Shown one piece after another: positions 1,103 to 49,294 of a stretch of 64,000 nt of DNA. Position 1 is the first letter of the stretch, and every line of letters begins with the position of its first letter. The stretch spans positions 61,876,001 to 61,940,000 of the forward strand of contig CM059430.1 of the NCBI GenBank assembly GCA_030390025.1, read 5' to 3'. The stretch comes from Squalus acanthias (taxonomy: Eukaryota). The notes under the pieces are model-generated. The model made no database searches and was not told where the DNA came from. It saw only the letters and a list, made by a program, of their open reading frames with translations. The position numbers were made by a program, and so were the translations under genes.

Positions 1103-2319
1103 CACTGACGACAAGGTTAGTTCCGCTTCCATTTGCTTTCCTGTTTCCCCGATGTGTCACTCCACAGTGATAAACTCCAGTGTCCTGGAAACTGATATTC
1201 CGAAGCTGGAAGGAGGCTCTTGCTTTCTCAGTAAGAAATCGTTTCCTGGTGTCTGAGCCTGGTTTTATCAATTCATTCTCGCCAAGTTTCCACCAATAAA
1301 TATTCACAACTGAATCGTCTTGCAAAATAGGAAATGTGCAATAGAAGACATCGGGCCAAAAATTGATGCCGCTACGCGAGAGTACGCACTGCGTACTCTC
1401 GCGTATTCTCTCTCCAATTGCCGGTTTTCTGCATGCACTGCGCATGCGCTGAAAACCGGCACTTGGTCTTTGGAAAAGGGGGCGGTTCCTCGGTGCACCG
1501 CGTGCGCGCTACAGGCTGCGCGCACGCTGTGCACTTAGTGCGTTGGACGCGCAGGTAAGGACAGAAGATTTTAGAAATGAAAAAAGGAGGAGTAAGACCC
1601 ACTTTTAACAAGGTAAGTAGTGAATTAAGTATTATTTTGAATTTTTTTTAACAGGTATATCTTTTTTAGAGACTTTAAAGACAGGTAAGTTTATTTTTAT
1701 AACTTTTTAAAAGATTTAAAATTTTTTCAAAAATTTAATTTTTTATTTAAAATGGTTAATTTATTTAACTATACTTATTTTATTAATGTGATGGTTTTTT
1801 TTTAAATTTAATTGAGGTTTAGCTGTTATTTTGGGGGGGTGTAAGATTCATAGCTTTCACAGCACGTATGTGAAACTTATGAATGGAAGATGGTGTGCTG
1901 CCATTGGCTCTAACTGAGTCACGTGATCCCACAGCTCGCACGAATTCACTACGCCGGTGGGATACGCAAGCACTGCCCAGCTGATGTCTGGAACATCAAG
2001 TTCGTGCGAGCTGGATCTGAAAAAGCCAACGCGGAGTGAGAGATCGCGCCTGCTCCTTACCCCCGCGGGAACAGAGCGAGATCAATTTCTGGGCCAATGT
2101 TTGTACCAGCCATCGAATTGGTATTTTCAGGGGCTTGGGTTACTTCAGAGTATCGGCAGCAACTATTAAGAAAATTAACATTTATTACAGTTGTAAAAAA
2201 CACGGAGAGAGATTCAGAGAGAGACAGAGAAACATAAAGCCCAAGCGCGAACGAAAGAAAATACCTATGAAAATAATCCCCATGAACTGTATGCTCCGAA
2301 GTACAGCTCTCATGTACAT
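1103..2319 (-). pseudogene. Receptor copy A: leader and V exon, disrupted; downstream exons not seen in the window
   Basis: Leader 2265-2319 (MYMRAVLRSIQFMGIIFI, donor G|GTATTT); V exon 1103-2162 with a 1-nt frameshift near its start and a MITE at 1353-2095; 3' part DVFYCTFPILQDDSVVNIYWWKLGENEL...QDTGVYHCGVTHRGNRKANGSGTNLVVS, donor G|GTAAG. Confidence 0.85.
1353..2095. mobile_element. MITE (probably PIF/Harbinger-derived) inserted in the copy A V exon
   Basis: Imperfect TIRs gggccaaaaattgat ... atcaatttctgggcc; GC-rich ends and AT-rich centre; V coding sequence resumes on both sides with 3 extra nt. Confidence 0.8.
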
Positions 2320-2418
2320 TTCAGTGATTGATGCTGGCCGTTCGAAGACAACAAACATGAAGCTCTAATCGTTTGGGGAAATAACGTTGTGCATAACCTG
2401 ATGTGAATTGTGAGACAG

Positions 2419-2424
2419 TGACGT
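2419..2424 (-). promoter_or_regulatory. Candidate CRE/ATF promoter element of copy A
   Basis: TGACGT 100 bp upstream of ATG 2319. Confidence 0.45.
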
Positions 2425-3689
2425 GTGAGACTACACGCCTGTGACTGTGGTGCCAACGGCCGAGTTTAGCAGTGAAATGAAGATGTGTGCTTCATGTAGA
2501 TTAGAGCCTCATCACACCACCCAATGTTATTTCAAGGCAACCTTAGACCTGTGTATCTGTTGAAAAATATATTTCAGTTTTATAATAAGTTTTACTTGAG
2601 AACATAATTGATCAGAGCAATTGAGCTGGTCAATGAAATTTGATGTGTTTTGTGAGCGTCTGCAATGGTGATAGAAAGGGCTGTAATGTTCCAAACACAA
2701 TGCCACATACATCCAGCATTTCAGCTGCTTTTAAATTTAGAAACCAAGTTGTACGGACATGGTCACCTTTGAGGTTGAGAAGTGTAAGATGGAAAACAAG
2801 TTAAATCAGGAGGCAGTGATTAATAATGGCAAGCAGCGCGTTTGAAATCCTGACGATAATCGAAGGAAGCAAAGACTGAGGGAGGTTTGGAGGTCTTCAG
2901 AAGGAAAAATTATTGAATTCAATTGTTTGAGATAGCAGAAATGAGGAAGGGTCTGCTGGAAGACATGTTTGCAGTTTCGGAGGAAAATAGGGAAACATTT
3001 GGAACAGCGCTGACAGTAACATGATAGCAATAGTGGGAGGGACTGAGAGGCTGGAGATGAGAATGAGCAGAATTGTTAAATGAGAAGCCTTTTCTGTTGT
3101 TCTGTCCACGAGTGTCAGAGATATCAGAATCTCTCTCGATATGGGGGCATGTTCAATTCTTGACGACATTGACTTTGCAGACAGTCCGGAGCTGTCGAGG
3201 AGAAAATAACTGCTTGGCACGAACGTGAGCTGTTCATTATAGTGACCTTTATCACCCACGAAAAACCTTGCCACCAACGTCCTTTCCTGAAATCATTCTA
3301 TAAAAAACTATTGTCATAATGTGTACAAGGAATAATCAGCTGTTGGTTAACAACATTCATGTCTGTACAACTCTAGGAAGCCCCAGTCTTGAATTGTGTC
3401 TTGAGATAGCGATATCACATCCCCGTTGCAAGACGCGTCCTGCTGTAGACTTCATCACGTTATGCATTTATTAAAAAAATTGTACCCATGCAGGACTCAT
3501 ATATCTTACAGTTCTCAGCTCCAGAAGTTTATTTCAAATAAACGAAAATATAGTGGTAAGTGAAATTTCAGCCGGACTGTCTAAAAGTCACGCTGTTGAC
3601 GGTCGTGTTCCAAACGCTTTGTAAACTGAATCTATTATCCGACTACCGGGATGCAAGCCAATTAAGGACTGATATAAGGAAGTTCTTAT

Positions 3690-3970
3690 TGGGCAACACA
3701 TCCCAGCTCTTTGACCTCTACCAACGAGCAGGATGACAGCAGCAACATCATGGGAACATAACCATCTCCAAGTTCTTCTCCAAGTCACACACCATCCGGA
3801 CTTGGATATACGTCGCCGTTCCTTCATCACCTTTGGGTCAATATCCTAGAAGACTCTACCAAACCATGTGTAAAGACTGCAGCAGTTCAAGAAAATGCCC
3901 ACCACCACTTTGTATAGGGCAACTAGGAATGGGTAATAAATGAAGCCTTGCAGATGTCACCCCCATTCCT
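3690..3970 (+). mobile_element. LINE 3' fragment (same family as 6896-7420)
   Basis: Shared ccaagtcacacaccatcc...gttccttcatc...gggtcaaaatcct tail. Confidence 0.7.
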
Positions 3971-13545: not shown

Positions 13546-13549
13546 CAGG

Positions 13550-15609: not shown

Positions 15610-16092
15610 CTATTTCGTTCTTGCATCTGTGTAGACAGCCTCTGTTACGCCTCTTGGGGTTTTCGTCTGTATCTCGTCATATTCTGCGCTTACTTTATTA
15701 TTTTTAGATTTTCCCGCTTTCTCGGGGCCAGACAATTCTAGAGTCGCGTACGTGACCTTGTACCGGGCTGTCCCTTGTTTTATCTGAAAAGCCAATGTTT
15801 GGAAATATTGTTGATTGGTCCTGTTACCAGTTTGTGGTTTGCTGTTCAAGGCAGCCGGCAGAATAACACACAAAAAGCTTTACATACAACACACGGTCAA
15901 AGTCAGAACAACCCGAAATACTCGACTATTACAATAATTTTGGTGCTCCACGGGTGATCTATGTTTCTCTTATCTGCTTCTCAGCCCCACCTGAGCATAC
16001 GCTGAGCTCTGCTCTTCACGTTTACATCTTGGAGTTTTCCTGGCTTTGCTCAAGTCTACTGCAGCATAAGCCACGATCTCGTCATTGGCTCC
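15610..16092 (-). pseudogene. Copy B cytoplasmic ITIM exons (15991-16092 and 15610-15783)
   Basis: Phase-0 exons GANDEIVAYAAVDLSKARKTPRCKREEQSSAYAQ | IKQGTARYKVTYATLELSGPEKAGKSKNNKVSAEYDEIQTKTPRGVTEAVYTDARTK*. Confidence 0.8.
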
Positions 16093-16759
16093 CTGCATGG
16101 GCCCGAAAGAAAATGTTTTGTTATGTGGCTAGTTCAATGCCCTCACAAATTTAGAGACTGCTGACCAAACAATAAACAGAATGACCTGGGCTACAAATAA
16201 AATGCAGAAACCACATCTAATATATTTAAAGATGTGCGAATATTTATGCCGGTAAATAGTGTGCCCATTGTAACTTACATTTCAACCTGTCGATTTTCAC
16301 TACAATACAGGGTTACAGATATGTTTAAACAAGTGGTAGTTTCGGCATCATATCAGATTCCAAAAGCAACGGTGAGATGGATGTACACATAATCAATACC
16401 TAGTTATATGTTGAATGAAGCTACGGATTCCATTTTTCTCCTTCTTTAATCACTTACACCTGCATCGCAACAAGTGTGAAAACACGATTTGAATGATTGA
16501 TCAAAGAGGGACAAATACTTTTGCGAAATAGGTTTTGATAAAATATCCCCATCATAAGAATATTTATTTACACTGGAACCCTATTCCTGGATAAATGATA
16601 TGAACCAACCAGTTCTTCATGAGGGTCTAGTATTGTTGTACTTTCCTGCTTACCGGGAAATGAATGGAATTTAATTACATTCAATGATTAGAATGTTTAT
16701 TCAGTTTCCATGTTTGCACTTTCAAAAGTATTTTACAGTCAATGTAAAGCTCAACATGA

Positions 16760-17920
16760 CTTTAGATATATAGGTTGACAGAGCAATGGCAGACGAAATT
16801 CAACGCAGAGAAGAGTAGAGCGCTACAGCTCGGAAGAAAAAATAAGCTACACATGTACTTCATGGATTGTATTAAAATAACTAAAGATGGAACTGAAAGA
16901 GACCTAGGGGTTTAGTAGACTGAACGCTAAACATGTCCACCCAATGCATAGCAGCAATGGACAAAGCCAATAGGCTGATGAACAACATAGGCAAAACAAT
17001 AGAATGAAAGTCAGAGGAGGGAACGATCAAACTGTATAGTGCTCTTGTCACACGGACCATTGAATAATGTGACCAATTTTGGTCACTAATGGCCAAGCGC
17101 TAGTGCCAGTGCAGAGAAGAGCCACCAGGCTGGTTTCCCAGGGTCAGGGGACTGAGCTGTGAGGAAACTCTGAAAAAACGTGATCTTTTAGACTGGAAAG
17201 GAGGCGTCTCAGCTATCATCTTATTGAAAAATATAAGATAGCTAAGCGTATTGAAAATGTGAATCAAGAGTTTTTTTTCATTGATTCTCAGGACTTGGGT
17301 GTCGCTGACAAGGGCAGCATTTATTGCCCTTCTTTAGTTGCCCTTAATTACAGACAACCTAACGGTTTACTAGATCACTTCAGAGGGCAGTTAAGTGTTA
17401 ACCATATTGGTGTGGAACTGATGTGACCTGTAGGCCAGACCGGGTAAACACGGCAAGTTTCCGTTTCTAAAGGACATTAATGAATTACTTAGCATTTTAT
17501 GACAACCCGATAGCCTCATGGTCACTTGACTTTTACTGATACCAGGTTTTTTATTTCCAAATTTTTAAAACTGAATCCAAATTCTCAATATGCCTCGGAT
17601 CGGTTTACCCACCTTCTCGGGATTACAAATCCAGACTTTTGACTACCAGTTCAGTAACATAAGCACTACACTACCGTACCCGTTTAGTATCAGATATTTA
17701 ACTCGGGGACACTGATAAAAAACTAGCAAATGAGAATTTTAGGCATGATATCAGAAATTCTTCTTTACAGAGAGATCAACATGAGGAACAAGTTCCACAT
17801 ACAGAAAATGAGGCAAACGACCTGAGACCCCTTAACAAACAGCTGGATTCTACACTGGGGAAACAGTCCATCTGTCGGGATGGACCAAATAACCTTCCTC
17901 ATCAGCAGTTATTTTGTGAT
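16760..17920 (+). mobile_element. Old CR1 fragment with nested SINE-like element (about 17275-17685) in a copy B intron
   Basis: Degenerate caatggcagacgaaattcaacgcagagaag...; nested piece carries the reverse complement of the 6896-7420 tail. Confidence 0.65.
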
Positions 17921-18329: not shown

Positions 18330-18440
18330 CTTTATTCTTCAAACTGCATCTCGTCCCAATGATGATCATGAGCACCAGAAACGCCAATCGACCCAGCGCA
18401 CATCCAAGACCCCAGATGTAACGATATTTACCATCAGATT
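18330..18440 (-). pseudogene. Copy B TM exon (ESDGKYRYIWGLGCALGRLAFLVLMIIIGTRCSLKNK)
   Basis: Acceptor taatcttgcag, donor G|GTAGG, hydrophobic run, homology to 41225-41338. Confidence 0.8.
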
Positions 18441-19603: not shown

Positions 19604-19915
19604 CTGGGTCGGAATTAGCAACTGTGTGGATGGCAATGGCGGGAGTCACGAGGGAGGCATGAGATACCAAATAGATGTAAACAGCCTCGTTCAGCACAGG
19701 CTGCGTCTCTTCCAAAGAGCTGGAAACTTCATACAGTCCCTCAGTGTTCTGCCGTTTAATGAGATTTATCCCAGTTGCAGTTTCGACGCCATTTTTATAC
19801 CAAAAGAGGGTTAAATCGCCCGGGTAAAACTCAGCCGTTTCACACACAAGAATCAGAGACGCAGCTGCACTGCTCTCGGGTGTCCTGGAGACAATCTTCA
19901 CTGGAGTTGGGGCAG
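19604..19915 (-). pseudogene. Copy B C1 exon (open but lacks F-strand Cys)
   Basis: Within ORF 19554..19931: LILVCETAEFYPGDLTLFWYKNG...YIYLVSHASL versus YTCLVSHISL in copy C. Confidence 0.88.
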
Positions 19916-20549: not shown

Positions 20550-20665
20550 GGAGGTCGTCGACCTGAAACGTTGACTCTGCTCCTTTCTCCACAGCTGCTG
20601 CCTGAACTGCTGAGTATTTCCAACGTTTTTGTTTATATTTCAGATTTCCAACATCCGCAGTATAT
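20550..20665 (+). repeat. Short interspersed palindromic repeat, half copy (Penelope-associated type)
   Basis: gacctgaaacgttgactctg...gctgagtatttccaac...cagatttccaacatccgcagta; homologous to 32985-33190. Confidence 0.6.
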
Positions 20666-20897
20666 TGACTCAGTAGCATGTTAATTACTCTGGTTAATAT
20701 TGATAGCATTTTAAACAACTCAGCAAATGGAACGTCATATTGTGCCGTATAATTAGCAGTTGTGTGCAGAGTTTCAGTGTAAATGTCTTAATATAATTGT
20801 TATATAATATCAAAGACGGTGCACGTAAACAATGACAAAACATCATCCTTGCTACATTTGATATATTTGGACGTTCCCGCTCACTCCGGTCACTTAC

Positions 20898-21209
20898 CGC
20901 ACACAGTTAGATGTGATCCTGTTCCATTTTCATTAATACTTCCATGACGGATCACTGCGCAGTGATCGATTCCAGAGTCCTGGAAAGTCACGTTCAGTAA
21001 CTCAAAGAAACCGCCTCATTTTTTTTTGAGAACAAATCGTTTTCTGTTATCGTCTCCTGTTTGCAAATAACCATTCTCACCCTGTTTCCACCAGCGCACT
21101 TCTACCCCTGAATTGTTATGAGAAAGGGGGATTACGCAGTGGAAGGCGATGTCTGTCCCCCTTAATGTATTTACTTTTTTGGGAGTTTGAGACACGCTGA
21201 TCGCAGCAG
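20898..21209 (-). pseudogene. Copy B V exon with in-frame stop
   Basis: AAAISVSQTPKKVNTLRGTDIAFHCVIPLSHNNSGVEVRWWKQGENGYLQTGDDNRKRFVLKKK*GGFFELLNVTFQDSGIDHCAVIRHGSINENGTGSHLTVC; canonical AG/GT. Confidence 0.88.
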
Positions 21210-21560
21210 CTATTAGAAAATATATTCAAAGTTTGGTTAATTGTATTCTATGCGGAACTAGGCTCTTTAGAACACATTACTACATGGAAAAGAAAAAGGG
21301 AAAGCAGAATACAGACGAACGAACTATATTTCATTGATTTTGTGTGGTATCTACTTCAGATTCTTTTATTGCGACGGTTGGGCTAGAGAATAATCAGGTA
21401 CCTGTGTAAATGAAACACCGCGAGAGACAGGAACAGGAAAGGAAACATCACACTCGACAACATGCCAAGCAAAATAATCAACTGATCACTGACTGCACAG
21501 ACCGTGTGGTTACCAACGAAAGTAGGGCTTGCTGATTGTTTAATGTGAAATGCGCCACAG

Positions 21561-21574: not shown

Positions 21575-22615
21575 CTGTGACTGTTGGTTCACAAAATAGC
21601 TTTCGTTTGTGAAGTGAAATTTCATGACGATTCTGCTCTTCGGCAGCCATCACGGTCAACAAAGAATTAGAATAAAATATTGTCCGCATTTCAAATGGAG
21701 AATTTACCATCAATCGCTGAGCCAGTGTTGGTTTCTCTTAGATTAAGATGTGGAATGTGCACATTCCTTGTAGTGAACCTCCTGAGGCAAATATTCTTAC
21801 ACTTCCCTTCGGTTGTACGCTACTGTTACCGTCACACAATATACCAGACATGTAAAATCTGAACAAACTGGGAACATTTATCGATTGTTTATAATTAGTT
21901 CTTAAATAACAGTAGCAATATTTTATGAGAAAGGCTAAAGGTAAGAAAATAGCTGATTAAGCCAGCAGTTGTCTGTGTGGAGAATGTTCTACTATAATTT
22001 CACACATCGCTGCACATTCCACGGGATACTGGGGAGATCGTATTCATTGTGACGTGTTATATCTCGGGAGACCTGATATTATTCCGAACACAGTGACCTG
22101 AATCTGATCAGTCAGTCATAACGTTGGGGTTTATTTTTACATTATAATAACCATGTTGAACATTTAGGAAATAGGGATTTGATGATGCCATCAGAGAGGT
22201 GTCGATATATGCTTCGGGCCAGGGTATCTTTAAATACAATTTCCTGCTTTCAGCCGGTCCTTACTAAAATAATTGGGGGGAGAAATTCGTTATTGCCCCT
22301 TTTTGGACGCTGATTTTTGAAATCGTGAAAAATTAGCGCCAGGCGCTAATGATTTTGAGATTCCCCTAAAATGGCTTTTAGCGCTCCAGGATAGAAGTGG
22401 AGCACTAAATCAAGCGCCAATGACCTCAATAGGGCGCTACAGGGGGCCTTTCTGCAGATCTGTAATTAATTTCAGGTGCAATGCAATCGGGAATTATAGT
22501 TCACAGTGGCGCCTGCCAGCTCTGAAAGGGGTGGTTGCATCAATGTGCAGATCCTCATTATCAGCAGTGCTGGCTGCGAGGGCGACCTTCAATCAAATCA
22601 ATCCCCTGATCCTGA

Positions 22616-24480: not shown

Positions 24481-24767
24481 CACTAGGGTCTTTAGTTAAT
24501 ATTGTTGTTGTATATATGTGGTTATTGATTTTGGATAAATGTATTCTTGAAATTTCGCAGAGATGGTGCTGTGTCTCATTTCAGCTTTGGGATGTGGTAT
24601 GGCATGAGAAATTGATGGAATGATAGGGATTGGATGAGCAACTGGGAAGTGGCCTCGAATTCATTGGAACCGAAGTCATAGATCGCCCTTCCACAAGACT
24701 GATGGATTGGCTGGCTCCTCTGTCGCTGCTGTTCATGCTCCTGTTCCTCTCGTCCTTGTCCTCCTCC

Positions 24768-32984: not shown

Positions 32985-33190
32985 TTCAACAAAAGCAAAA
33001 CACTGCGCACGCTGGAAATCTGAAATAAAAACAGAAAATGCTGTAAAACCCTCAGCAGGGCAGGCAGAATCTGTAGAGAGAGAAAGAGAACTGATGAATG
33101 GTCATCGACCTGAAACATTACTCTGGGCTTCTCTCCATAGATGCTGCCTGGCCTGCTGAGTGTTTTCCAGCACTTACCGTATCTTTATTC
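32985..33190 (+). repeat. Palindromic interspersed repeat with a hammerhead-like core
   Basis: gctggaaatctgaaataaaaacagaaaatgctg ... ctgatgaatggtcatcgacctgaaac ... gctgagtgttttccagca. Confidence 0.6.
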
Positions 33191-39559: not shown

Positions 39560-39952
39560 CAATTACACCTACATTGTATGATATAATACTGGAATACTTT
39601 ACTCTGTTTTCATTTGTTATTTTTGGATTTCCTCGTTTTTTGGAGCCTGACCACTCTAGAGTCGCGTAAGTCCCTTGTTTGTTCGGTAAATCCGTGTTTG
39701 GAAAGATTGTTTATGGGTCGGTTTGCAGTTTCTTGGCTGCTGCTCAAAGTAGTCATCAGAATAACACACAAACAACCTGAGCTACAATACACGACTAGAG
39801 TCAGCCAACCTTTTATTCTCCATTATCGCATGCATGTTGATGCTACTGTGGTGATCTGTGTCTGTCTCATCCGCTTCTCAGCCCCGCCTGAGGGTACGCG
39901 GCCCTCTCCTGTTCAAGTTTAATTCTTGGAGTTTACAAAGTGCTGCTCAAAT
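39560..39952 (-). pseudogene. Decayed remnants of the ITIM-coding exons of copy C (probably now 3' UTR/flank)
   Basis: Old frame reads YAAIDLSSTL*TPRIKLEQERAAYPQ; donor GT>GC at 39886-39887; last acceptor AG>CG at 39684-39685; remnant TYATLE with an upstream deletion. Confidence 0.75.
39812..39817 (-). terminator. Candidate poly(A) signal AATAAA for copy C
   Basis: About 135 nt after the premature TAG, followed by GT-rich sequence; absent at the homologous site of copy B. Confidence 0.4.
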
Positions 39953-39988
39953 CTATTGCAGCATATTAGCGATTTGAGCATTTGCTTC
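39953..39988 (-). CDS. Receptor copy C exon 6: truncated terminal coding exon (EANAQIANMLQ*)
   Basis: Acceptor ggcccatgtag; homologue of copy B ITIM exon 15991-16092, but a 1-nt deletion before TAT-GCT-GCA gives TAG at 39953-39955. Confidence 0.7.
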   Translation of the reverse strand, partial: EANAQIANMLQ

Positions 39989-40359
39989 CTACATGGGCCG
40001 AAACAAAATATGTTGTTATGTGTATGTGTCATTGCTTTCACCAGTTCACGTACTGCTGGTGAAACATTGAACAGAATGACCTGGGCTAGAGAAATAGCAC
40101 AAAAACCATAATGAATATCTTTAAATAGTACGAATATAAAGGCCGATAATTACTGCAATCACTGTAACTAATATTTAAACATGTCGATGTTCTCTCTACA
40201 ACACTGTGACAGACATCTTTAAATGTGCAGCAGATCTAGAACAGGAATTCATTAAGCTTTTCCCCCCAAAAAAAACAATTATTACCTAGGTACAGTTTCA
40301 ACGAAACTGACAGTTTTCTTTTGTACTCTTTAACCATTTATAACAGCACACATCGGGAG

Positions 40360-40450: not shown

Positions 40451-40638
40451 GGCAAATTTCTTCCCTGAGCTCCCGGTGTTAAATATTTTTCTAAACACGA
40501 TTTGAATGACTCATTACGCGGGACAAATACTTTTAGAAAATAGACAAACTGTTCTGACATGATTATGATAAAATCTCTCCATTACAGCAATCATTCTTCA
40601 TATTTCAACCCGTTGCGGAGATGCATGAATGACCCTAC

Positions 40639-40679
40639 CGGCTCTTCACTGCGTAGCAGTCCCTTTACACCTTTTTTAC
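40639..40679 (-). CDS. Receptor copy C exon 5: short cytoplasmic exon (GKKGVKGLLRSEEP)
   Basis: Acceptor attcacag, donor CCG|GTAGGG; 41 nt converts phase 1 to phase 0 as required; homologous to 16610-16653. Confidence 0.7.
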
Positions 40680-41224: not shown

Positions 41225-41338
41225 CTTTATTTATCTGAAATTGGCAGTGCGTCCCAATGAAGTTCAGGAGAACTAGACACGCCAATCCACCCACCGCATA
41301 TCTAAAATACGAGTAGTACGGGGACATACCGACATCAT
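41225..41338 (-). CDS. Receptor copy C exon 4: stalk and transmembrane
   Basis: Acceptor taatcttgcag, donor G|GTAAG, 114 nt phase 1-1: DDVGMSPYYSYFRYAVGGLACLVLLNFIGTHCQFQINK; homologous to 18330-18440. Confidence 0.8.
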
Positions 41339-42404
41339 CTGCAAGATTAATAGGAGCATATATAGTAAGTTGTATATTATGGTGGGTTTTTTGTAAACAG
41401 AGGCCAAAGCAGAGTTTATTGGTTAATCTAATGGTGTTTTCAGTAACTCCGCAGTATAGAATGGAAAATGAAATGTATGTTAATTATTTTTTACATAAAA
41501 TATTACAGCGAACTCCATCATCGAATGGGTGAGACGCTTCTGGAATAATCTGCGAAGGGGGTCCCGAATTTAAGGCCTTCGAACACAGGCGCAGCGGAGG
41601 TGGAATACGAGAGGGACAAGTTTTCCTGAACCGAATGGTTTGTAATTTTACTTGATTTTATTATGTTCTTTACTTAATTGTTTGACGGTGACAATTGTTT
41701 TCGCCGTTGCCAGCATAAATGCCGAATTGCAGAAATCGGTTAAACCCCTAAATCACACTGCATGTATTGAAGTAAGAATGTCACTAAATAGTAAAGGAGA
41801 TCAAAGCGCGCTGGTTTATTAATTATTGTCTGAGAGGCAAACAGTTGTTATTAAAACCATGTAAGCGGCTGTAATGCAGGCAGGCCTGTTTGCACAGTTT
41901 AAATGAAATGTATGAAACAGGTCCAACCCGCAATGCCATGGAGGGGTAAGGGGTACGTGTTGGCCAGTGGGTTAATTTCAGAACTCTTTACGAGTGTTCG
42001 CCGAAAGGGAGATCATGATCGGGAACTGCATTGGGAGAAGCCCGAGCGCAGGCAGCTTCAATGCAGCTCCTGATAACAGACTTGATGCAGGAAAACTAGA
42101 TAATTTTAACATGGAAGGAAACAAAGAATGATTACTAACGGGAAGAATGTGAAATATAATGGAACAACAAAGATAAACATCTTGGTGGTATTTAGCTGAA
42201 GTATCCGAAAGTGGGGTCAGGATCGGGAACTGTATTGGGAGAAATCTCAGAGCAAACAGAATGACTTTAGCTCTTGCTTACAGTCTTGCAAGGATAACAG
42301 ACAATGGTAAAGAATAAAACAATATTAACATGGAAACAGAAGAAACTGGAAATTATTATTAATAATAACAGGTGAGGAAATTTAATCGGATAAAATATAC
42401 ATTG

Positions 42405-43050
42405 TTGCTTATGTTTCCAACGGGTTGGAGTATAAGAGTAAGAAAGTCTTGCTGCAGTTATATTGAGATTTGGTGAGACAGCGCCTGGGGTACTGTTTAA
42501 CGATTTGGCCTCCTTACCTAAGGAAGTATATACTTGCCTTAGAGGGAGTGCAACGACAGTTCATTAGTTTGATTCCTGGAATGAGAGGGCTGTCCTATGA
42601 GGAGCGATTGAACAGAATGGGCCTATATTCTCTGGAGTGTTTAAAAATGAAAGGTGATATAATTGAAATGTATACAATACTTAGAGGGCTTGATACGGTA
42701 GATGCTGAGAGGATGTTTCCCTCGGTTCGGGAATCTAGAACTAGTCGTCATAATCTCAGGATAAGGTGTCGGCCATATAGAACTGAAATGAGGAGAAATG
42801 TCTTCATTCAGATTGTTGTGAATCTTCGGACTTCTCTACCCCAGTGGGCTGTGGATGCTCAGTCGATGAAAATATTCAAGACAAAGATCGATAGACTTTT
42901 GGGCACTAAGGGAATCAAGATTTATGGGGATAGGATGGAAAAGTGGAGTTGAGGTAGAAGGTCACCTATGATCTTATTGAATGGTGGAGCAGGTTCGATG
43001 GGCCGTATGGACTACTGCTGCTCCTATTCTAATGTTGATATGTTCTTATA
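42405..43050 (+). mobile_element. CR1 3' fragment in the copy C C1-TM intron
   Basis: ORF 42470..42952; tail. Confidence 0.88.
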
Positions 43051-43145
43051 TTTATCATACATCAAATAGATGAATTTGAAAGCTAATAAAGTTTGACTGA
43101 GAAAATATGTTTGGCGGGCGATCTAACCCATTTTACAACACATCA

Positions 43146-46100
43146 GTTTGTTGTGGTCCACGTGGAACAAACGACATAGGTAGGAACAGGGAGGAGGTCC
43201 TGCTGAAGTCAGGAGCTAAATTGAAAAGCAGGACCTCGAGGGTAACAATCGTTGGATTATTACCTGAGCCACGTGCAAATTGGCATAGACGCAGTCAGGT
43301 CAGAGGAATGAACACGTCGCTAAAGGGGTGGTGTGGGAAAGAGGGTTCCTTTTCATGGGACACTGGCACCAGTACTGGGACAGGAAGGAGCTGTACCAAT
43401 GGGACGGGCGCCACCTGAACCGGGATGGGACCCGTGTTCTAGCAGAAAGGGTAAATAGGGAGATGGCAAAGGCTTTAAATTAGTAAGATGAGGGGAGGGA
43501 TCCACAAGAAATGAAACCAGCCTAAATATAAACAAAACAGGAAATGAGAGCATAGGACAGAGTAAAGTAAGGGAGGACATTGATGGCCAGGGTATAAATA
43601 GAGTTATAGAACAGGAGTGTAAAATGATGGTTAAAAATAAAGTGAAAGGAAATGCTATTAAAAATGTCTGTACAGCACACAGTGTCCGTAATAAAACAGG
43701 GGAGCTGGAGGCAATCATGCATTGTGAGGAGCCAGACATAGTAGAGATTACTGAGACGTGGCTACAGAAAAATCAGGGCTGGGAATTAATCATTGCAGCA
43801 TATAACCTATTTAGAAAAGATAGAGAGGGAAAAAGGGGAGATGGAGTATCTGTAGTTATTAGGGATAACATAATGTCAGTAGAAAAAATTGACAGCAGCT
43901 ATCAGCATGACAGAACTAGAATGCATGTGGATAGAGATAAAAGATAATAAAGGGTCAATCACACTAATCTGGGTCGTCAACAGGCCACCTAATAGTGGAA
44001 GGGATGTGGAGGATGAAATATGCAAACAAATTAGGAAAATGAGTAAAACACATAGAATAATAATCATGGGGGATTTCAACGACCCAGATATTAATTGGAC
44101 AGAAGAGGTAGGTAAAGCGGATAAGGAAATTGAGTTCCTACAATGTGTACAGGACTCCTTTCTAACCCAATATTTAAAAAGCCCAAGAGGGAGGATTTGT
44201 TATTGGATCTGGTAATGGGGAATGAACCAGAGCAGATAAGATAAGTAAAATTAGGGGAACGTCTAGGCAATAGTGACCATGGTATAATACTCTTTAAAAT
44301 AATAATTGGGAAGGACATAAGGATAACAAAGACCATGATAATAGGGTAGAGAAAAGTTGATGTTGAGGGACTGAGAATAGAAATTGGGAAAATAAAATGG
44401 GCAACGATATTGGCAAACAATGACATAAAACAGCAATGGGAATTATTTAAAACTGTGTTCAACAGAGTCCAGGAAAAATATATTCTGCTAAAAAACAAGA
44501 AGAAGCTAAACACTGATGAAACACCATGGATGAATAAAGATATAATGGAAAATTGAGCGTAAGGAAAGAGGCATACATTAAGTACATAGGCAGCAGGGAG
44601 AGCATGATAAGGGAAAGTACGAAGAGGTTAGCTGAGAAGTCAAAAAAGGAAGGCAAAGGGGAACTATGAAATTAAATTTTCAAGGATCATAAAACAAAAT
44701 AATAAAATATTTTACAGGCACATCAATAAAAAGGAATGTCGGGATTGGAATAGGGCCACTAAGGAATGGAAAAGGATAATACCACAGGCAGTGATAGAGA
44801 GATGGCAGAAATATTGAATAATTACTTTGCCTCTGTATGTACCAGGGAGATAGAACAGGTGGACATGGCATTGGATCATGAGATTAATAATTAAATAGTT
44901 GCATTTAAAATAACGAGGAGATATATTAAATAAACTGATCAAACTGAAAGAGGAATACACCCTGGTACGGATGGATTACATCCGTGCATTTTAACAGAAT
45001 CTAGGGAAGAGATAGCAGAGGCATTACTACACATATTTAATAATCCATTCGAAAAAGGTGTAGTGCCAGAGGACTATATTTATGAAGGGAGATAGAACAT
45101 GTCCAGGGAACTATGGATCAGTCAGCTTAACATCGGTGGTAGGAAAAATAATGGAATCGCTACTAAAGGAGAAAATAGAAGAACATCTCGAAGCCAAAAA
45201 TATAACAATGAATAGTCAGCATGGATTTCAAAAGGGAGAGACTTTTTTGAACAACCTCATTGAATTTTTTGAAGAGTTAACAGGGAGAATAGACAAGGGT
45301 AATGCAATAGAATTAATTTATCCAGATTTTCAAATGGCCTCGATAGGGTACCACATATTAGACTAATGAATAAGGTCAGAGAATGCGGAGTCAGGGGCAA
45401 GTAGCAGAATGGACAGTGAGCTGGCTTCAAGGCAGAAAGCAGAGATGGGGTAAAAGGTAGCTATTCACAGTGGCAGAAGGTGGGTAGTGGTGTTCCACAA
45501 GGTTCAGTATTGGGACCACTGTTGTTCACAAATTATATTAACGATTTAGACTTTGGAATCAAAAACACAAGTTCTAAATTTGCGGATGTCACCAAATTTT
45601 GTTGATAGTTCATACTTAGGAGGAATGCAACAAATTACAGGAAAACTTTAATAATCTTGCAGAATGGACATATAATTGGCAAATGAAATTCAGCACAGAG
45701 AAATGTGAGGTATTACATTTTCGTAGGAAGAATAGAGAGTTCACTTATTACTTGGAGAGTGCGAGTCTGAGTGGGGTAGAGGTGCAAAGGGATCTCGGAG
45801 TACAAGTACACAAATCACTTAAAGTAGCGACACAGGTTAACAAGGCCATAACAAATAAAGCAGGCACTAAGGTTTATTTCTAGACGTATAGAATTGAAAA
45901 GTAGGGAAGTTATGCTGAACCAGCATCGAACCTTGGTTAGACCACACTTGGAGTACTGCGTACAATTCTGGTCACCATATTATAAAAAGGATATGGAGAC
46001 ACTGGAGAGGGAGCAGAGAAGATTTGCAAGGATGATACCAGAAATGCGAGGGTATACCTATCAGGAAAGGATGAACCGGCTGGGTCACTTTTCACTTGAA

Positions 46101-46505
46101 AAAAGAAGGCTGAGGGGTGACCTAATTGAGGTCTTTAAAATTATGAAAGATTTTGATAGAGTAAATACAGAGAGAATGTTTCCTTGTGGAAAACAGCATA
46201 ACTAGAGGCTAGCAATATAAGATACTCACCAAGAAATCAAATAGGGAATTCAGCAGAAACGTCTTTACCCAGAGAGTGGTGAGAATGTGGAACTCGCTAC
46301 CACAGGGAGTAGTTAAGGAAAATAGTATAGATGCATTTAAGTGGAGGCTAGATAAACATATGAGGGAATAGGGACAAGAGGGTTATGCTGACAGAGTGAG
46401 TTGAGGAAAGAGGGGAGGAGGCTCGAGTGGAGCATAAACGCCGGCATGGACTGTTTGGGCCGAATGGCCTGTTTCTGTGCCGTATGTCCTGTATAATCCT
46501 ATGTA
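43146..46505 (+). mobile_element. CR1 LINE (end of ORF1, endonuclease, RT), degenerate
   Basis: GTNDIG; EITETWL; IIMGDFN; RT fragments; host intron homology resumes after it. Confidence 0.92.
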
Positions 46506-46662
46506 AGGATATTATACATTCAAACATGAATGTAATGCTTTCATTGATATCTCCCATGGGATTTCTCTGGATTAACTTCATGATTGTTAGCATGTACAAA
46601 CACTACAATATATCTCTTTACGAATTGAACAGAAGCTGGTTTTCGGACTGTTGGCCTCGTAC

Positions 46663-46725
46663 CTTGGTTAGATTTGGAAACAACATAGGTGACAGCAGCT
46701 GGAGTCTCGAGAGAGACATGAGAAA
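46663..46725 (-). pseudogene. Orphan 3' fragment of an extra C1 exon (ISHVSLETPAAVTYVVSKSNQ) with its donor
   Basis: ORF 46541..46741 aligns to the end of 47407-47470; intron flank also duplicated. Confidence 0.8.
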
Positions 46726-47406
46726 TGAGAAATGGATACAATCGCTTGCTTGGGCGCTTTTCTTACGGGGCAAAGAGTTTTCACAATAAGACGCATCGAA
46801 GCGGCTCTACTGTTGCCAGGTTGAGGGCACAGTTTTAGAGGTTTATGAGGCAGATCCAATTAAACCCGCTCTCATATGGACAGCAGTGCGGCAAAAGTTG
46901 GTCAGGGGGTCAATTTAAGACCACTGCGCTAGAAGTAGCCGAAATGGGGGTCAGGATAGGGAACTGCATTGGGAGCCGCCCGATTACAAACAACATGACT
47001 GCAGCTCTGGTAACAGTCTTGGTGCAAGAAGAGCGGGCAATGATAAAGAATAAAACAATCTTAAAATCGAAACAAAAGAAACTGAAATATTTTTCATTAT
47101 AAGCAGGAAATATAATCGGATGGAAAAGGGAAACTTCTGATATAGTTGTACATATCAAATAAAGGAATTTGAAAGCAAATAAGGTTTGTCTGAGAATATG
47201 TGTGTGGCGGGCGAGAGAAACTGGTTTTACAACACATCGGATTCAATTCTATTGTACATTACAACATGAATTTAATGCTTTCGTTGATATTTCCCATGAG
47301 ATTTCTGTGGACATTCTTCATGATTATTAATATGTATAAACTGTCCGATATATCTGTTTAAAAATTAATGTAGCTATCTCTCCTTTTTCGACTCTTAGCA
47401 TCGTAC

Positions 47407-47712
47407 CTTGGTTGTATTTAGAAACAACATGGCTGACAACAGCTGGAGTCTGGAGGGAGATATGAGATACCAAACAGGTATAATTGGCATCGCTCGGGAC
47501 AGGCTTTGTCTCAACCAAAGAGCTGGAAACTTCATACAGTCCCTCCGTGTTCTGCTTTTTCCTGGTATGGATTGCTAATGCAGTTTCGACGCCATTTTTA
47601 TACCAAGTGAGGGTGAAATTCTCAGGAAAAAACGCAGCGGTTTTACACAGAAGAGTCAGAGAAGCAGATGAATTCCCTTCAGTGGAGACAATCTTCAGTG
47701 GGGTTGGGGCCG
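47407..47712 (-). CDS. Receptor copy C exon 3: Ig C1-set domain, open
   Basis: Acceptor ctctgttccacag, donor G|GTACGA, 306 nt: ...LTLLCKTAAFFPENFTLTWYKNG...GLYEVSSSL...YTCLVSHISL...; C1 hallmarks (C-x4-FxP, WxxNG, YxCxVxH). Confidence 0.92.
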
Positions 47713-48752
47713 CTGTGGAACAGAGAATGAAAAAGTCGCTTCACTGGGCATCATTGGGAGATTAAATATGATTCTGATTTACCGTTCCGTTCATTTTAAT
47801 ATAATAGCACCATTAGAAAGAGCGGCCTCCAGTCCTTTTAATGTTACGCACATCATCTGCAAACACCTGATCCATATATCTCATAGACACCCGCATCTGT
47901 TCAATTTTACCCGCGCTATCAAGTCCAAGACTTAGAGTTACTCAGCAGACAAGTCGCAACGATTTGCGAATCAATGTTTGCTTTTCGTAGTCCAAAAAAT
48001 TAAGTAAATAAACCTCGGGGGAAGTTGGCACGCTGAGTCCCTCCGTGTTAGGAACAGATAGACAGTGACGAGTAATATGCACATTGTTGATGATTGAACG
48101 GGTGCTAAGTCAGTATCGCACAAATTTCACAGCCGAAGCATAACAATTGGTGACAGAAAGTATGTTGGTTGAACCTCAGGAGGTTTTAGTAACACAGTTC
48201 CTCGGTATTGTTTTATTTATTGGAGGTTAGTCAGGTGGCAACGTTGTGTGTTCAAAGTACCAGTTTGTTGAGCGAAGCCGTTGAGCAACAGTTAGTTTCA
48301 CCCTGGCTTTCGAATCCCTGACGCTAACATGATATGAGAATTAATTTCAGGAATTTTAAACCGCAAAGACAGCGATGGGGGAAGACAGAGCATCAGTAAT
48401 GGGCTAAGAGCCGTGTATATGTTGGGAGAGACGCATGAATATAAAATATTTTCAGTCAGTTATATGCACGGAATTTGTTCCGAAATTCCGCTATCAGACA
48501 GCAGGAGTGTAAATTGTGGAGTTATAGTCCAATTGGTTAATATTGATACATTTTGCTATACTCTGTGAAATTGAATATCTAATTAGCAGTTCTATACAGA
48601 GCACCCGTACATACAACTTAACTTAGTGCGAGATTTATTAATAGACATGTTTATAATGCTCAAAACGGTGCAATAAAACAATCACAAAACATCCCCGTTT
48701 TATATGCTCGATAGATTTTCGACTGTCCCGCTCTCCTGTGTTTCACACTTAC

Positions 48753-49070
48753 CATGCACAATTAGATGTGATCCGCTTCCATTTCCTCGAATTATTCCTT
48801 GACGGAGCACGGCACACTGATAGACTCCAGAGTCTTCGAAAGTCGCGCTCAGCAACTGAAAGAATCCGCTCGCTTTTGTCAGGCCAAACCGTTTTCTGTT
48901 GTCGGCGCTTGTGCGCAGGTATTCATTCTCACCCTGTTTCCACCAATACACTCTTACCCAGGAATGGTCCTGCGAGATGGGGAATATGCAGTAGAAGGTG
49001 ATGTTCCCTCCTCTGGATACAATCGCTTGTTTGGGCGCTTGAGTTACACTGAACGAAATCTGGTCCGCTG
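48753..49070 (-). CDS. Receptor copy C exon 2: VJ-type Ig V domain, open
   Basis: Acceptor ttttctgacag, donor G|GTAAGT, phase 1-1, 318 nt: AADQISFSVTQAPKQAIVSRGGNITFYCIFPISQDHSWVRVYWWKQGENEYLRTSADNRKRFGLTKASGFFQLLSATFEDSGVYQCAVLRQGIIRGNGSGSHLIVH; B-strand Cys, C-strand Trp, DSGVYxC and GxG G-strand in one exon. Confidence 0.92.
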
Positions 49071-49239
49071 CTGTCAGAAAATATAGTCAAGTACAGGTTA
49101 ATTTTATTAGACACGGCATGGAGTTGGAAGAGAGAAAAATAATCTCGATAGAGGAATTACAGTTCACAAAATTAGTGTGGAAACTACCTCGGAAGCATTT
49201 TATAAATTAAAGTAGCTGCGACAATGAATAAAGAGGTAC

Positions 49240-49294
49240 CTGTGTAAATAATCCCCCGAAGAGACAGGCACAGGAAAAGCATACTCGCCGACAT
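49240..49294 (-). CDS. Receptor copy C exon 1: leader (MSASMLFLCLSLRGIIYT)
   Basis: ATG at 49294, 55-nt exon ending phase 1 at donor G|GTACC; same length and 3' end (GGG ATT ATT ...) as the copy A leader. Confidence 0.8.

What the first reader, a model, noticed from the sequence alone, without database searches (positions are those of the whole stretch)
1103..49294. Tandem family of non-rearranging VJ-C1 antigen-receptor-like receptors with signalling tails
Seen: three minus-strand paralogues; B and C share the full exon series L / V / C1 / TM / cyt1 / ITIM exons with compatible phases, and A shows L and V. The V exon includes its own J-like GxG strand, and I see no heptamer-nonamer RSS. Established: C1-set domains are largely confined to Ig, TCR, MHC, beta2m, tapasin, SIRP and a few B7 members; a single V plus single C1 chain is the TCR/IgL layout, but those rearrange and carry no ITIMs; SIRPalpha is V-C1-C1, NKp30 is V only, teleost NITRs are V-I. 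Inference: a cartilaginous-fish NK/myeloid receptor family resembling the proposed pre-RAG ancestor of antigen receptors. Automated pipelines may label it SIRP-like or IgL-like; I cannot confirm it is undescribed.
Basis: partly seen in the sequence, partly recalled or inferred. Interest (0 to 1): 0.9.

Follow-up and report, generated by a model that had tools for sequence, protein, structure and literature searches.

The report
Decayed shark VJ-C1 inhibitory receptor cluster
Three neighbouring, partly broken copies of a shark, ray and chimaera gene family that builds surface receptors shaped like an antibody light chain with inhibitory tails; annotation pipelines give the family many unrelated names, and it may bear on how antibodies arose.

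Summary
The exons are real. Three minus-strand V exons carry their own J-like strand, and no RSS lies at any of them. Copies B and C also have C1-set, TM and cytoplasmic exons.

No copy in this window is an intact V-C1-TM-ITIM gene.
- Copy B keeps three ITIMs but has five defects: a +1 frameshift in the leader, a TGA in V, Tyr>Asp before the second V cysteine, loss of the second C1 cysteine, and a cyt1 acceptor that reads CG.
- Copy C has clean L, V, C1, TM and cyt1 exons with fitting phases, but both ITIM exons are wrecked. Its frame ends after 11 codons.
- Copy A shows only an open V exon and a leader-like ORF.

The family is large. Of 142 held proteins of 520 aa or less, 77 have V followed by C1. 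All 30 representatives I looked up are chondrichthyan, and with a fourth search the named members span 17 species, including a chimaera. NCBI gives them about nine unrelated automatic names. Neither domain sits close to SIRP, NKp30, UrIg2 or IgL. The fold of an intact orthologue best matches antibody light chains.

I found no description in the papers I could read, but the key shark NCR3 paper was not held. The scan has noted this family on other DNA of this genome. Transcript evidence here is weak.

The parts
49240..49294 (-). Copy C leader exon. ATG at 49294, 55 nt, phase 1, donor CAG|GTACC.
   Evidence: The peptide MSASMLFLCLSLRGIIYT is nearly identical to the leader of orthologue P0166.
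48753..49070 (-). Copy C V exon with its own J-like strand (GNGSGSHLIVH). 318 nt, AG/GT, intact.
   Evidence: (V-set 34.5 bits). Carries the family residue at 2 of 2 invariant and all 11 near-invariant columns; at one of these the reference P0166 itself departs. 79% identical to P0167.
47407..47712 (-). Copy C C1-set exon. 306 nt, AG/GT, intact.
   Evidence: (C1-set 41.8 bits). 6 of 6 invariant and 9 of 9 near-invariant columns kept.
46640..46762 (-). Extra decayed copy of the 3' half of a C1 exon. The second Cys position reads Phe (LYPFLISH).
41922..46509 (+). Retroelement-rich insert in copy C's C1-TM intron (LINE endonuclease and reverse-transcriptase ORF fragments).
   Evidence: break in B/C colinearity; RT-like ORFs; Exo_endo_phos, weak match at 43624-43944
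41225..41338 (-). Copy C stalk and TM exon. 114 nt, AG/GT, no charged residue in the TM.
40639..40679 (-). Copy C cyt1 exon. 41 nt, takes phase 1 to phase 0, AG/GT.
   Evidence: Homologous to the KQGRVMGPTRHEEL segment of P0166.
39888..39988 (-). Copy C remnant of ITIM exon 1. A 1-nt deletion makes the frame read EANAQIANMLQ then stop (TAG at 39955-39953). The old frame also carries a stop, and the donor is GC.
39585..39671 (-). Copy C remnant of ITIM exon 2. The acceptor reads CCG where B has CAG, and there is a 19-nt deletion against B.
21402..21463 (-). Copy B leader exon. 62 nt, one base too long, which frameshifts it against the V exon.
   Evidence: Compared with copy C's leader and with P0009.
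20898..21209 (-). Copy B V exon. In-frame TGA at 21018-21016 after a run of nine A. The conserved Tyr before the second Cys is Asp.
19604..19915 (-). Copy B C1-set exon. The second Cys is replaced by Tyr (YIYLVSH).
   Evidence: (35.4 bits). Contigs of two runs match it at about 91% over 19604-19914 and end at its borders.
18330..18440 (-). Copy B stalk and TM exon. It has an Arg in the TM where orthologue P0176 has Gly.
16610..16653 (-). Copy B cyt1 exon (GKQESTTILDPHEEL), preceded by CG instead of AG.
   Evidence: (73% identical to P0176)
15991..16092 (-). Copy B ITIM exon 1. Holds VAYAAV, and SAYAQ completed to S-x-Y-x-x-I by the next exon.
15610..15783 (-). Copy B ITIM exon 2. Holds VTYATL, AEYDEI and AVYTDA, then a stop.
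1103..1411 (-). Copy A V exon. Open, both Cys and the J-like GSGTNLVV strand present, a 4-residue insert before the first Cys, weak acceptor, good donor.
2202..2283 (-). Leader-like ORF upstream of copy A (...FMFLCLSL...). The assignment is tentative.

Best explanation
The window holds a head-to-tail cluster of three old paralogues of a large multigene family known from sharks, rays and chimaeras. The family's normal product is a type I membrane protein. It has a signal peptide and a germline-joined V domain with its own J strand, so no RAG joining is needed. These are followed by one C1-set domain, a short stalk, a TM helix, and a cytoplasmic tail built from a short linker exon plus repeated exons that each carry Y-x-x-L/V/I motifs, many of them canonical ITIMs.

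Inferred mechanism for intact members: the V face binds a ligand, Src-family kinases phosphorylate the ITIM tyrosines, and SH2 phosphatases (SHP-1, SHP-2 or SHIP) are recruited to damp activation of the cell. This is how SIRPalpha and other ITIM receptors work.

In this window the genes are decaying. B is a pseudogene with five independent defects. C keeps an intact ectodomain, TM and linker but has lost both ITIM exons, so if expressed it would be a tail-less, non-signalling form. A is seen only as a V exon. The exon anatomy, the defects and the family membership are shown. Signalling, ligand, cell type and expression are inferred.
For: Exons, splice sites and phases.

Domain types: Pfam V-set and C1-set scores are above the curated cutoffs.

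Family size and layout: an HMMER scan of 1.84 billion representatives with copy C's V exon gave 193 hits at E<=0.001 and 95 at E<=1e-10. Of 142 held proteins of 520 aa or less, 77 have both domains, always with V before C1 (77 of 77). 60 of the 77 have a TM after C1, and 31 have at least one canonical ITIM in the tail.

Intact orthologues: P0166 (Heptranchias perlo, 374 aa) runs L-V-C1-TM-linker-VHYAAL...LTYATL. Copy C's V is 79% identical to that group, and B's V is 73% identical to P0009.

Conserved residues: copy C keeps all invariant and near-invariant family columns, while B loses Y103 and C207.

Fold: the AF2 model of P0166 has both Ig domains mostly above pLDDT 90 and a TM helix at 233-269. 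The 50 Foldseek matches listed are all chains of antibody or Fab entries (light chains by chain label in most). They span both domains at E about 1e-15 and 18-24% identity.

No RSS at the V exons.
Against: No transcript of B or C was seen. No RNA holder of the C stretch was listed. On the B gene, three small runs only guessed to be RNA gave contigs on the C1 exon alone, at about 91% identity, so they come from a paralogue.

The family layout therefore rests on automatic gene models, whose RNA support I could not inspect. Some models are plainly imperfect: they show intron read-through tails or N-terminal extensions.

The B and C defects rest on a single assembly. The TGA follows a run of nine A, though a length error there would shift the frame rather than make a stop.

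C's short tail could be a functional variant rather than decay. The ITIM function is inferred from motifs only.
Confidence: 0.8

Rival explanations
1. The family is the shark NCR3 (NKp30) family, already described. The genes would then be known NKp30 homologues that carry an extra C1 exon, which is sometimes skipped.
For: The V is of the VJ type, as in NKp30. RefSeq-style models of single genes come in V-TM-ITIM and V-C1-TM-ITIM forms with the same TM (P0065/P0073, P0085/P0088, P0113/P0094). The elephant shark cluster holds a V-only ITIM member, P0012, among V-C1 members. Nurse shark has at least eight NCR3 genes, MT914154-61, listed in the methods passage of PMC12227049.
Against: No NKp30 chain is among the 60 PDB matches shown for the V exon or for a 12-sequence V profile. 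None of the 30 looked-up representatives, nor any named hit, is called NCR3. An unchecked first-stage note places NKp30-like single-V genes on another piece of this genome, in the MHC class III region. The 2025 UrIg2 paper uses NCR3 only as a single VJ exon and outgroup. It has no occurrence of ITIM or SIRP, and its 'VJ-C1' and 'single C' hits name no two-domain receptor.
Confidence: 0.3
2. The family is secondarily non-rearranging. On this view it descends from an Ig light-chain cluster that was joined in the germline by RAG, as happens in cartilaginous fish, and that later picked up TM and ITIM exons. It would be a derivative of antigen receptors, not a relic older than them.
For: The whole ectodomain fold best matches chains of antibody entries, mostly light chains. 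NCBI names several members 'immunoglobulin lambda-1 light chain-like'. Unchecked first-stage notes say that elsewhere in this genome these genes are interdigitated with germline-joined sigma-type light-chain clusters. That shark light-chain genes can be germline-joined is established knowledge, recalled here.
Against: Sequence identity to solved light chains is only about 20%. A C1-only search with P0006 residues 158-261 drew 28 candidates and 11 hits, all family members and no IgL. The family is present in a holocephalan as well as in sharks and rays, so any such event would be very old. No RSS footprint or light-chain cluster lies in this window.
Confidence: 0.25
3. Copy C is a working gene: an ITIM-less decoy, or a partner chain of an ITIM-bearing or adaptor-bound relative, not a decaying one.
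For: All five upstream exons are open, with canonical AG/GT sites and fitting phases. All conserved family residues are kept. Its branch in the V tree is short, 0.063. Short-tailed models exist in other species. An ATTAAA lies about 30 nt after the new stop (sequence).
Against: The TM has no charged residue for adaptor pairing. The tail loss came through several unrelated lesions typical of decay: a 1-nt deletion, a stop in the old frame, a GC donor, a lost acceptor and a 19-nt deletion. A 4.6-kb retroelement block and a stray C1 half-exon sit in the C1-TM intron. No RNA holder was listed.
Confidence: 0.3
4. The genes are chondrichthyan orthologues of SIRP (signal-regulatory proteins) that lost one C1 domain.
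For: The commonest NCBI label is SIRPalpha-like or SIRPbeta-1-like. SIRPalpha (2wng, 43.3 bits) and SIRPgamma (4i2x, 39.7 bits) match the C1 exon. Both have a VJ-type V and ITIM tails. The SIRP layout is recalled knowledge.
Against: There is one C1 domain, not two. No SIRP chain is among the 60 shown for the V exon or the V profile. For C1, Ig heavy chains, UrIg2 and TAPBPR score as well or better. The same family also gets tapasin-related, CD276, MHC class II beta, Ig lambda and NCR3LG1 labels, which shows there is no consistent nearest relative.
Confidence: 0.1

Closest known systems
SIRPalpha / SIRP family
   Same: Non-rearranging V with a J-like strand, C1-set constant domain, TM, and a tail with several ITIMs. 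The presumed mode of action is SHP recruitment. It is the commonest automatic label for the family.
   Different: SIRP has V-C1-C1 (recalled), and this family has a single C1. The V shows no special similarity to SIRP. The C1 is no closer to SIRP than to Ig CH, UrIg2 or TAPBPR.
NKp30 / NCR3, including the nurse shark NCR3 family (MT914154-61; Kinlein et al. 2021, not read)
   Same: A single-exon VJ domain. V-only splice forms with ITIM tails are predicted from some family genes.
   Different: NKp30 has no C domain and signals through a TM arginine (recalled). Human NKp30 is not among the best PDB matches. Whether shark NCR3 genes overlap this family could not be checked.
UrIg and UrIg2 (Flajnik et al. 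2023, 2025; the 2025 introduction and two Results sections were read)
   Same: A non-rearranging VJ exon with a split leader, followed by C1-type domains, and found in elasmobranchs. That paper's Fig. 2 legend postulates a two-domain VJ + C1 precursor, which is the layout seen here.
   Different: UrIg has three C1 domains and is secreted. UrIg2 has nine or more C1 domains plus a TM. The paper has no occurrence of ITIM. Per-domain scores of copy C's C1 to UrIg2 (9dmx) are only 13-22 bits. This family also occurs in a chimaera, while that paper reports UrIg genes only in elasmobranchs.
Immunoglobulin light chains (including germline-joined shark IgL clusters)
   Same: V(J) + one C1 domain. This is the best structural match to the whole ectodomain. 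Some members are auto-named Ig lambda-like. Unchecked notes report physical mixing with IgL clusters elsewhere in this genome.
   Different: TM and ITIM exons are present. Identity is about 20%. No IgL was retrieved by the C1-only search.
TCR chains
   Same: V-C1-stalk-TM layout of one chain. A TCR beta chain is among the best single-stretch matches to the V exon (27.0 bits).
   Different: No RSS and no rearrangement. A long ITIM tail takes the place of a short tail with charged TM residues.
PRARP, NITR, B7H6 (recalled, or met only in passages)
   Same: All are IgSF genes discussed as relatives of antigen-receptor V domains or as V-C1 molecules. NITRs carry ITIMs. One family member is auto-named NCR3LG1-like and one CD276 homologue.
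   Different: None could be compared by sequence here. NITRs are teleost V or V-I receptors (recalled). B7 V domains lack the full G-x-G J motif (recalled).

Membership tests
Chondrichthyan VJ-C1-TM-ITIM family (unnamed; defined here by its database members) | V exon 40-80% identical to members, with a J-like G-x-G-x-x-L-x-V strand ending the exon | tested here: met
   C is 79% identical to its best member, B 73%, A 50%.
Chondrichthyan VJ-C1-TM-ITIM family (unnamed; defined here by its database members) | A single C1-set exon directly after V, then a TM exon, a linker exon and tyrosine-motif exons | tested here: met
   The exon series is present in B and C, but with disabling lesions.
Chondrichthyan VJ-C1-TM-ITIM family (unnamed; defined here by its database members) | An intact reading frame that yields a receptor with ITIMs | tested here: not met
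   B has five defects. C has lost both ITIM exons. A is incomplete in the window.
SIRP | Three Ig domains, V-C1-C1 (recalled) | tested here: not met
   One C1 exon lies between V and TM in B and C. 77 of 77 two-domain members have the order V then C1, and 2 of 89 showed a second C1 match.
SIRP | Nearest sequence relatives are SIRPs | tested here: not met
SIRP | Synteny with the SIRP locus; CD47 binding | not testable with these tools
NKp30 / NCR3 | A single V domain, no C domain, a stalk, and a TM (recalled) | tested here: not met
   A C1 exon is present. V-only forms are predicted as isoforms in some species.
NKp30 / NCR3 | V domain groups with NKp30 of other vertebrates and with nurse shark NCR3 | tested here: inconclusive
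   Human NKp30 is absent from the best 60 PDB matches. Shark NCR3 sequences could not be obtained.
NKp30 / NCR3 | Location in the MHC class III region | not testable with these tools
   The window holds no MHC marker. Only unchecked notes exist.
UrIg / UrIg2 | VJ followed by three or more C1-type domains | tested here: not met
   A single C1 exon.
UrIg / UrIg2 | Domains closest to UrIg or UrIg2 | tested here: inconclusive
   9dmx tops the C1 list only by summing three weak stretches of 19.0, 13.1 and 21.6 bits. It is absent from the 60 shown for V.
Ig light chain | V(J)-C1 with no membrane anchor; nests within an IgL isotype | tested here: not met
   TM and cytoplasmic exons are present. No IgL is among the C1-only search hits. 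Only the fold is alike.
Rearranging antigen receptor genes (Ig/TCR) | V segment flanked by an RSS, with a separate J segment | tested here: not met
   V and J lie in one exon ended by a splice donor. No RSS lies at the V exons.

The most novel reading that the evidence does not exclude
The family is an undescribed lineage of non-rearranging antigen-receptor-like genes, found across chondrichthyans. It would keep, as a living membrane receptor, the two-domain VJ + C1 layout that Flajnik et al. (2025, Fig. 2 legend) postulate for the precursor of UrIg, Ig and TCR. It would be a sister or outgroup to light-chain and TCR-type chains rather than a derivative of them. Its ITIM tail would suggest that the ancestor of antigen receptors was an inhibitory innate receptor.
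Probability: 0.25. Interest if true: 0.85.

Novelty: new variant of a known kind. Interest (0 to 1): 0.55.

Why it matters
The search for single-exon VJ genes that resemble the target of the RAG transposon is an active question (PMC12227049, introduction read). The current candidates, UrIg and UrIg2, have many C domains, and their discoverers infer a two-domain VJ-C1 ancestor. This family has exactly that layout. It is abundant and occurs in sharks, rays and a chimaera, yet databases list it under about nine unrelated automatic names. If it is truly undescribed and branches near Ig/TCR, it gives a testable living model for the pre-RAG receptor and for its signalling mode. If it derives from germline-joined light chains, it would instead show antigen-receptor genes being recycled into innate inhibitory receptors.

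This window adds a picture of birth-and-death turnover: three old paralogues side by side at three stages of decay.

Tried and rejected
Cyt1 exon. I first took a 44-nt candidate, conserved between B and C (B 16190-16147, C 40085-40042, peptide AQVILF...), for the linker exon. I rejected it when tblastn with the orthologue P0176 located the true linker exon at 16653-16610. A conserved block at 16480-16531 / 40493-40543 gave no exon with a usable phase.

PDB sequence searches. Searches with the V exon, the C1 exon and a 12-sequence V profile did not single out any family. Multi-Ig proteins top the lists by summing stretches.

Word-based protein searches. P0012 gave 4 hits among 531 candidates. 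The C1 region of P0006 gave 11 hits among 28 candidates. Both returned only family members, so no Ig, TCR, SIRP, NCR3 or UrIg reference sequences were obtained. Only a within-family V tree was made (quick method, 120 rows, 105 different, no rows dropped by me).

RNA. The look-up of sequencing runs listed no RNA holder, only three small runs guessed to be RNA that held next to none of the sampled words. Read laying on the B gene gave repeat-derived contigs and an exon-bounded match of a paralogue on the C1 exon only.

Papers.
- Not held: Kinlein 2021, Flajnik 2012, Ohta & Flajnik 2015, the UrIg 2023 paper and Ohta 2019.
- Full-text searches for UrIg; NCR3/shark/NKp30; NKp30/cartilaginous fish/C1 domain; Kinlein/NCR3 family; PRARP; nonrearranging/VJ-C1/shark/ITIM; NKp30/B7H6/shark/Xenopus; and SIRP/shark/C1-set/ITIM/cartilaginous found no paper describing a chondrichthyan VJ-C1-TM-ITIM family. 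That holds for the held library only.
- Supplements of PMC12227049 (table S1) and PMC10751288 (files S1-S9) may list these genes or their linkage.

My guess that the ORF at 25327-25860 belongs to a Harbinger-type transposon got no Pfam support.

The fold used the natural database protein P0166 with an alignment of 40 database proteins.

Full report
WHAT IS IN THE SEQUENCE

The window has no N. tblastn of the long minus-strand ORFs against the window found three V-type exons, two C1-type exons and a stray C1 fragment, all on the minus strand. The V exons lie near 1.1-1.4 kb (A), 20.9-21.2 kb (B) and 48.75-49.07 kb (C). The C1 exons lie at 19.6-19.9 kb (B) and 47.4-47.7 kb (C), and the fragment at 46.64-46.76 kb.

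blastn shows that B (13.5-21.6 kb) and C (35.0-49.5 kb) are colinear duplicates. The colinearity is interrupted in C by about 4.6 kb between the C1 and TM exons. That block holds LINE-type ORF fragments.

Copy C's V exon scores 34.5 bits against Pfam V-set (cutoff 26). The C1 exons of C and B score 41.8 and 35.4 bits against C1-set (cutoff 21), above the C2-set and I-set models.

Each V exon runs through a G-x-G-x-x-L-x-V strand and ends at a GT donor:
- C: GNGSGSHLIVH
- B: GTGSHLTVC
- A: GSGTNLVVS

V and J are therefore one exon. A loose scan required CAC plus at least 6 of 7 heptamer bases, at least 6 of 9 nonamer bases, and spacers of 11-13 or 22-24. It found 9 sites in the window against a mean of 6.1 in 50 shuffles. 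None lies at a V exon.

COPY C

| Exon | Coordinates | Length |
|---|---|---|
| Leader | 49294-49240 | 55 nt |
| V | 49070-48753 | 318 nt |
| C1 | 47712-47407 | 306 nt |
| Stalk/TM | 41338-41225 | 114 nt |
| Linker (cyt1) | 40679-40639 | 41 nt |

All five have canonical AG and GT sites, and their lengths keep the frame: phase 1 throughout, then phase 0 after cyt1. Laid exon by exon on an alignment of 40 family proteins, copy C carries the family residue at all 8 invariant and all 20 near-invariant columns. At one of these columns the reference protein itself is the odd one.

The tail is gone.
- The homologue of ITIM exon 1 has a 1-nt deletion against B. It reads EANAQIANMLQ and then stops at 39955-39953.
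- Its old frame (YAAIDLSSTL*TPR...) also carries a stop, and its donor is GC.
- The homologue of ITIM exon 2 has CCG where B has the acceptor CAG, and a 19-nt deletion.

The TM has no charged residue.

COPY B

B keeps the tail:
- ITIM exon 1 (16092-15991) holds VAYAAV and SAYAQ. Splicing to the next exon's Ile completes the second motif to S-x-Y-x-x-I.
- ITIM exon 2 (15783-15610) holds VTYATL, AEYDEI and AVYTDA, then a stop.

The gene is nevertheless broken in five places:
1. The leader exon is 62 nt, one base longer than frame allows, compared with copy C and with orthologue P0009.
2. An in-frame TGA sits at 21018-21016, where P0009 has Gly.
3. The Tyr of the Y-x-C motif is Asp.
4. The second C1 cysteine is Tyr, where orthologues P0009, P0172, P0176 and P0038 read Y-I-C.
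5. The linker exon, found only with orthologue P0176 (GKQESTTILDPHEEL, 73% identity), is preceded by CG where copy C has AG.

The Arg in B's TM is Gly in P0176. I read it as one more change in a dead gene, not as an activating feature.

COPY A

The V exon 1411-1103 is open. It has both cysteines and the J-like strand, plus a 4-residue insert before the first Cys. Its acceptor has a poor pyrimidine tract, and its donor is good. A leader-like ORF (...FMFLCLSL...) lies at 2283-2202. No C1 match lies in the 1.1 kb left downstream, so the rest of the gene, if any, is off the window.

THE FAMILY

An HMMER scan of 1.84 billion representatives with copy C's V exon gave 193 proteins at E<=0.001, 95 at E<=1e-10 and 9 at E<=1e-30. 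The single-stretch hits of 220-400 aa are 40-69% identical.

| Feature | Count |
|---|---|
| Near-full V match | 117 of 142 |
| C1 match | 89 of 142 |
| Both domains | 77 of 142 |
| V before C1 | 77 of 77 |
| TM after C1 | 60 of 77 |
| At least one canonical ITIM in the tail | 31 of 77 |
| Two or more ITIMs | 8 of 77 |

Forty proteins have V without C1. Among them are V-TM-ITIM forms that share their TM with a V-C1 form of the same species, labelled as isoforms (P0065/P0073, P0085/P0088, P0113/P0094).

All 30 representatives looked up are chondrichthyan. With, the named members come from 17 species of sharks, rays and the chimaera Callorhinchus milii.

Their automatic names are SIRPalpha-like, SIRPbeta-1-like, tapasin-related-like, CD276 homologue, MHC class II beta-like, Ig lambda-1 light chain-like, NCR3 ligand 1-like, 'immunoglobulin superfamily member' and 'uncharacterized'. 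In one search the 22 best named hits are chondrichthyan. The only others are 10 reptile multi-Ig proteins at 22-27% identity.

In a within-family V tree, C sits with P0167, P0165 and P0166 (79% identity). B sits with P0009 in a 7-row clade with 98% SH-aLRT support. A sits nearest P0020. The three neighbours are therefore old paralogues, each with counterparts in other orders. P0166 of Heptranchias perlo is an intact counterpart of C, with a nearly identical leader and a full tail (VHYAAL, LTYATL and others).

WHAT IT RESEMBLES

By sequence, neither domain has a clear home.
- The V exon's best PDB matches are all near 27 bits: contactin-2 (27.4, summed over weak stretches), a TCR beta chain (27.0), PD-L1 (26.7) and a shark VNAR (26.7). 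No NKp30 or SIRP chain is among the 60 shown of 1,096 matched.
- A 12-sequence V profile did no better. No NKp30 or SIRP chain is among the 60 shown of 5,177 matched.
- The C1 exon's top match, UrIg2 (9dmx), is a sum of three weak stretches of 19.0, 13.1 and 21.6 bits. Ig heavy chains, SIRPalpha (43.3 bits, two stretches), SIRPgamma and TAPBPR (37.0 bits, one stretch) follow.
- A C1-only word search returned family members alone.

By fold, an AF2 model of P0166 has both Ig domains mostly above pLDDT 90, a TM helix at 233-269 and a disordered tail. All 50 Foldseek matches listed are chains of antibody or Fab entries, light chains by chain label in most. They are aligned over 213-229 columns across both domains, at E about 1e-15 and 18-24% identity. 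The low TM-scores reflect a different elbow angle. The ectodomain is thus a V + C1 unit of the light-chain/TCR-chain shape.

LITERATURE

I read the introduction and two Results sections of Flajnik et al. 2025 (PMC12227049) and passages of Verissimo et al. 2023 (PMC10751288).
- UrIg is VJ plus three C1 domains and is secreted. UrIg2 is VJ plus nine or more C1 domains with a TM.
- The Fig. 2 legend postulates a two-domain VJ + C1 precursor.
- That paper has no occurrence of ITIM or SIRP. It uses NCR3 as a single VJ exon and tree root.
- Eight full-text searches found no paper describing this family (listed under Tried and rejected).
- The papers most likely to bear on it were not held: Kinlein 2021 on shark NCR3, Flajnik 2012, Ohta 2019, the UrIg 2023 paper and Fu 2019 on PRARP. 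What I say of their content is recalled. Supplements were closed.

EXPRESSION

No RNA holder of the C stretch was listed. Three small runs of the same species label, only guessed to be RNA and kept as contigs, were laid on the whole B gene.
- No contig lay on the L, V, TM or cytoplasmic exons.
- Run X2 had one contig of 415 nt matching 19604-19914 with 29 differences.
- Run X3 had two contigs matching 19604-19851 and 19822-19910.
- Run X1 had none there.

The matches stop at the borders of B's C1 exon and run on into unlike sequence. That fits a spliced transcript of a paralogue about 91% identical. It does not prove it, because the runs may hold DNA. The other covered bins are high-copy repeats.

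VERDICT

It is wrong in treating B and C as matching working genes. The best reading is a decaying three-gene segment of a large chondrichthyan family of germline-joined VJ-C1-TM-ITIM receptors. The inhibitory mechanism is inferred from motifs.

Three questions stay open and are stated as rivals:
- whether the family equals the published shark NCR3 family;
- whether it descends from germline-joined light chains. Unchecked notes of this scan say that elsewhere in this genome such genes are interleaved with germline-joined IgL clusters;
- whether it predates rearranging receptors.

The scan has noted the same family on other DNA of this genome, including 376 kb upstream on this piece.

Noticed in passing
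window 46509-46762: A second, decayed copy of the 3' half of a C1 exon plus about 130 bp of following intron lies about 650 bp downstream of copy C's C1 exon, next to the retroelement block. It may be a local partial duplication or the stump of a lost fourth paralogue.
   Followed up: partly
window 22000-28000: A GC-rich block (0.50-0.51 GC against about 0.40 around it) with strong negative GC skew at 26-28 kb and many overlapping ORFs on both strands. The ORF at 26405-26935 matches reverse transcriptase. The ORFs at 25327-25860 and 23721-24125 match no Pfam family.
   Followed up: partly
window 1380-1420: A near-perfect palindrome (GAGAGTACGCAGTGCGTACTCTC) lies inside the 5' end of copy A's V exon frame, just downstream of its weak acceptor. 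An AT-rich low-complexity stretch follows upstream at about 1560-1830.
   Followed up: no
window 17160-17560 and 20560-20760: Very high contig depth (thousands) in all three laid runs, inside introns of copy B. These are short interspersed repeats that are abundant in those libraries. The 20553-20667 piece also matches 32996-33165 in both orientations.
   Followed up: no
window 16147-16190 and 40042-40085: A 44-nt stretch upstream of ITIM exon 1, with exon-like AG/GT borders and an open frame, is conserved between B and C. It is not the linker exon of the orthologues. It could be a conserved intronic element or an alternative exon.
   Followed up: partly
window 50000-62000: Several LINE fragments on both strands: apurinic-type endonuclease at 51114-51665, reverse transcriptase at 57966-58544, and others among the ORFs. 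No further Ig-type exon was found upstream of copy C.
   Followed up: partly
database proteins P0050, P0071, P0099, P0106, P0183-P0191 (not in the window): Turtle and lizard proteins with two to four VJ-type V domains, some with ITIM tails, are the only non-chondrichthyan proteins drawn by the family's V domain. Identity is 22-27%, and their automatic names include pIgR-like, FcRL5-like and DSCAML1-like.
   Followed up: no
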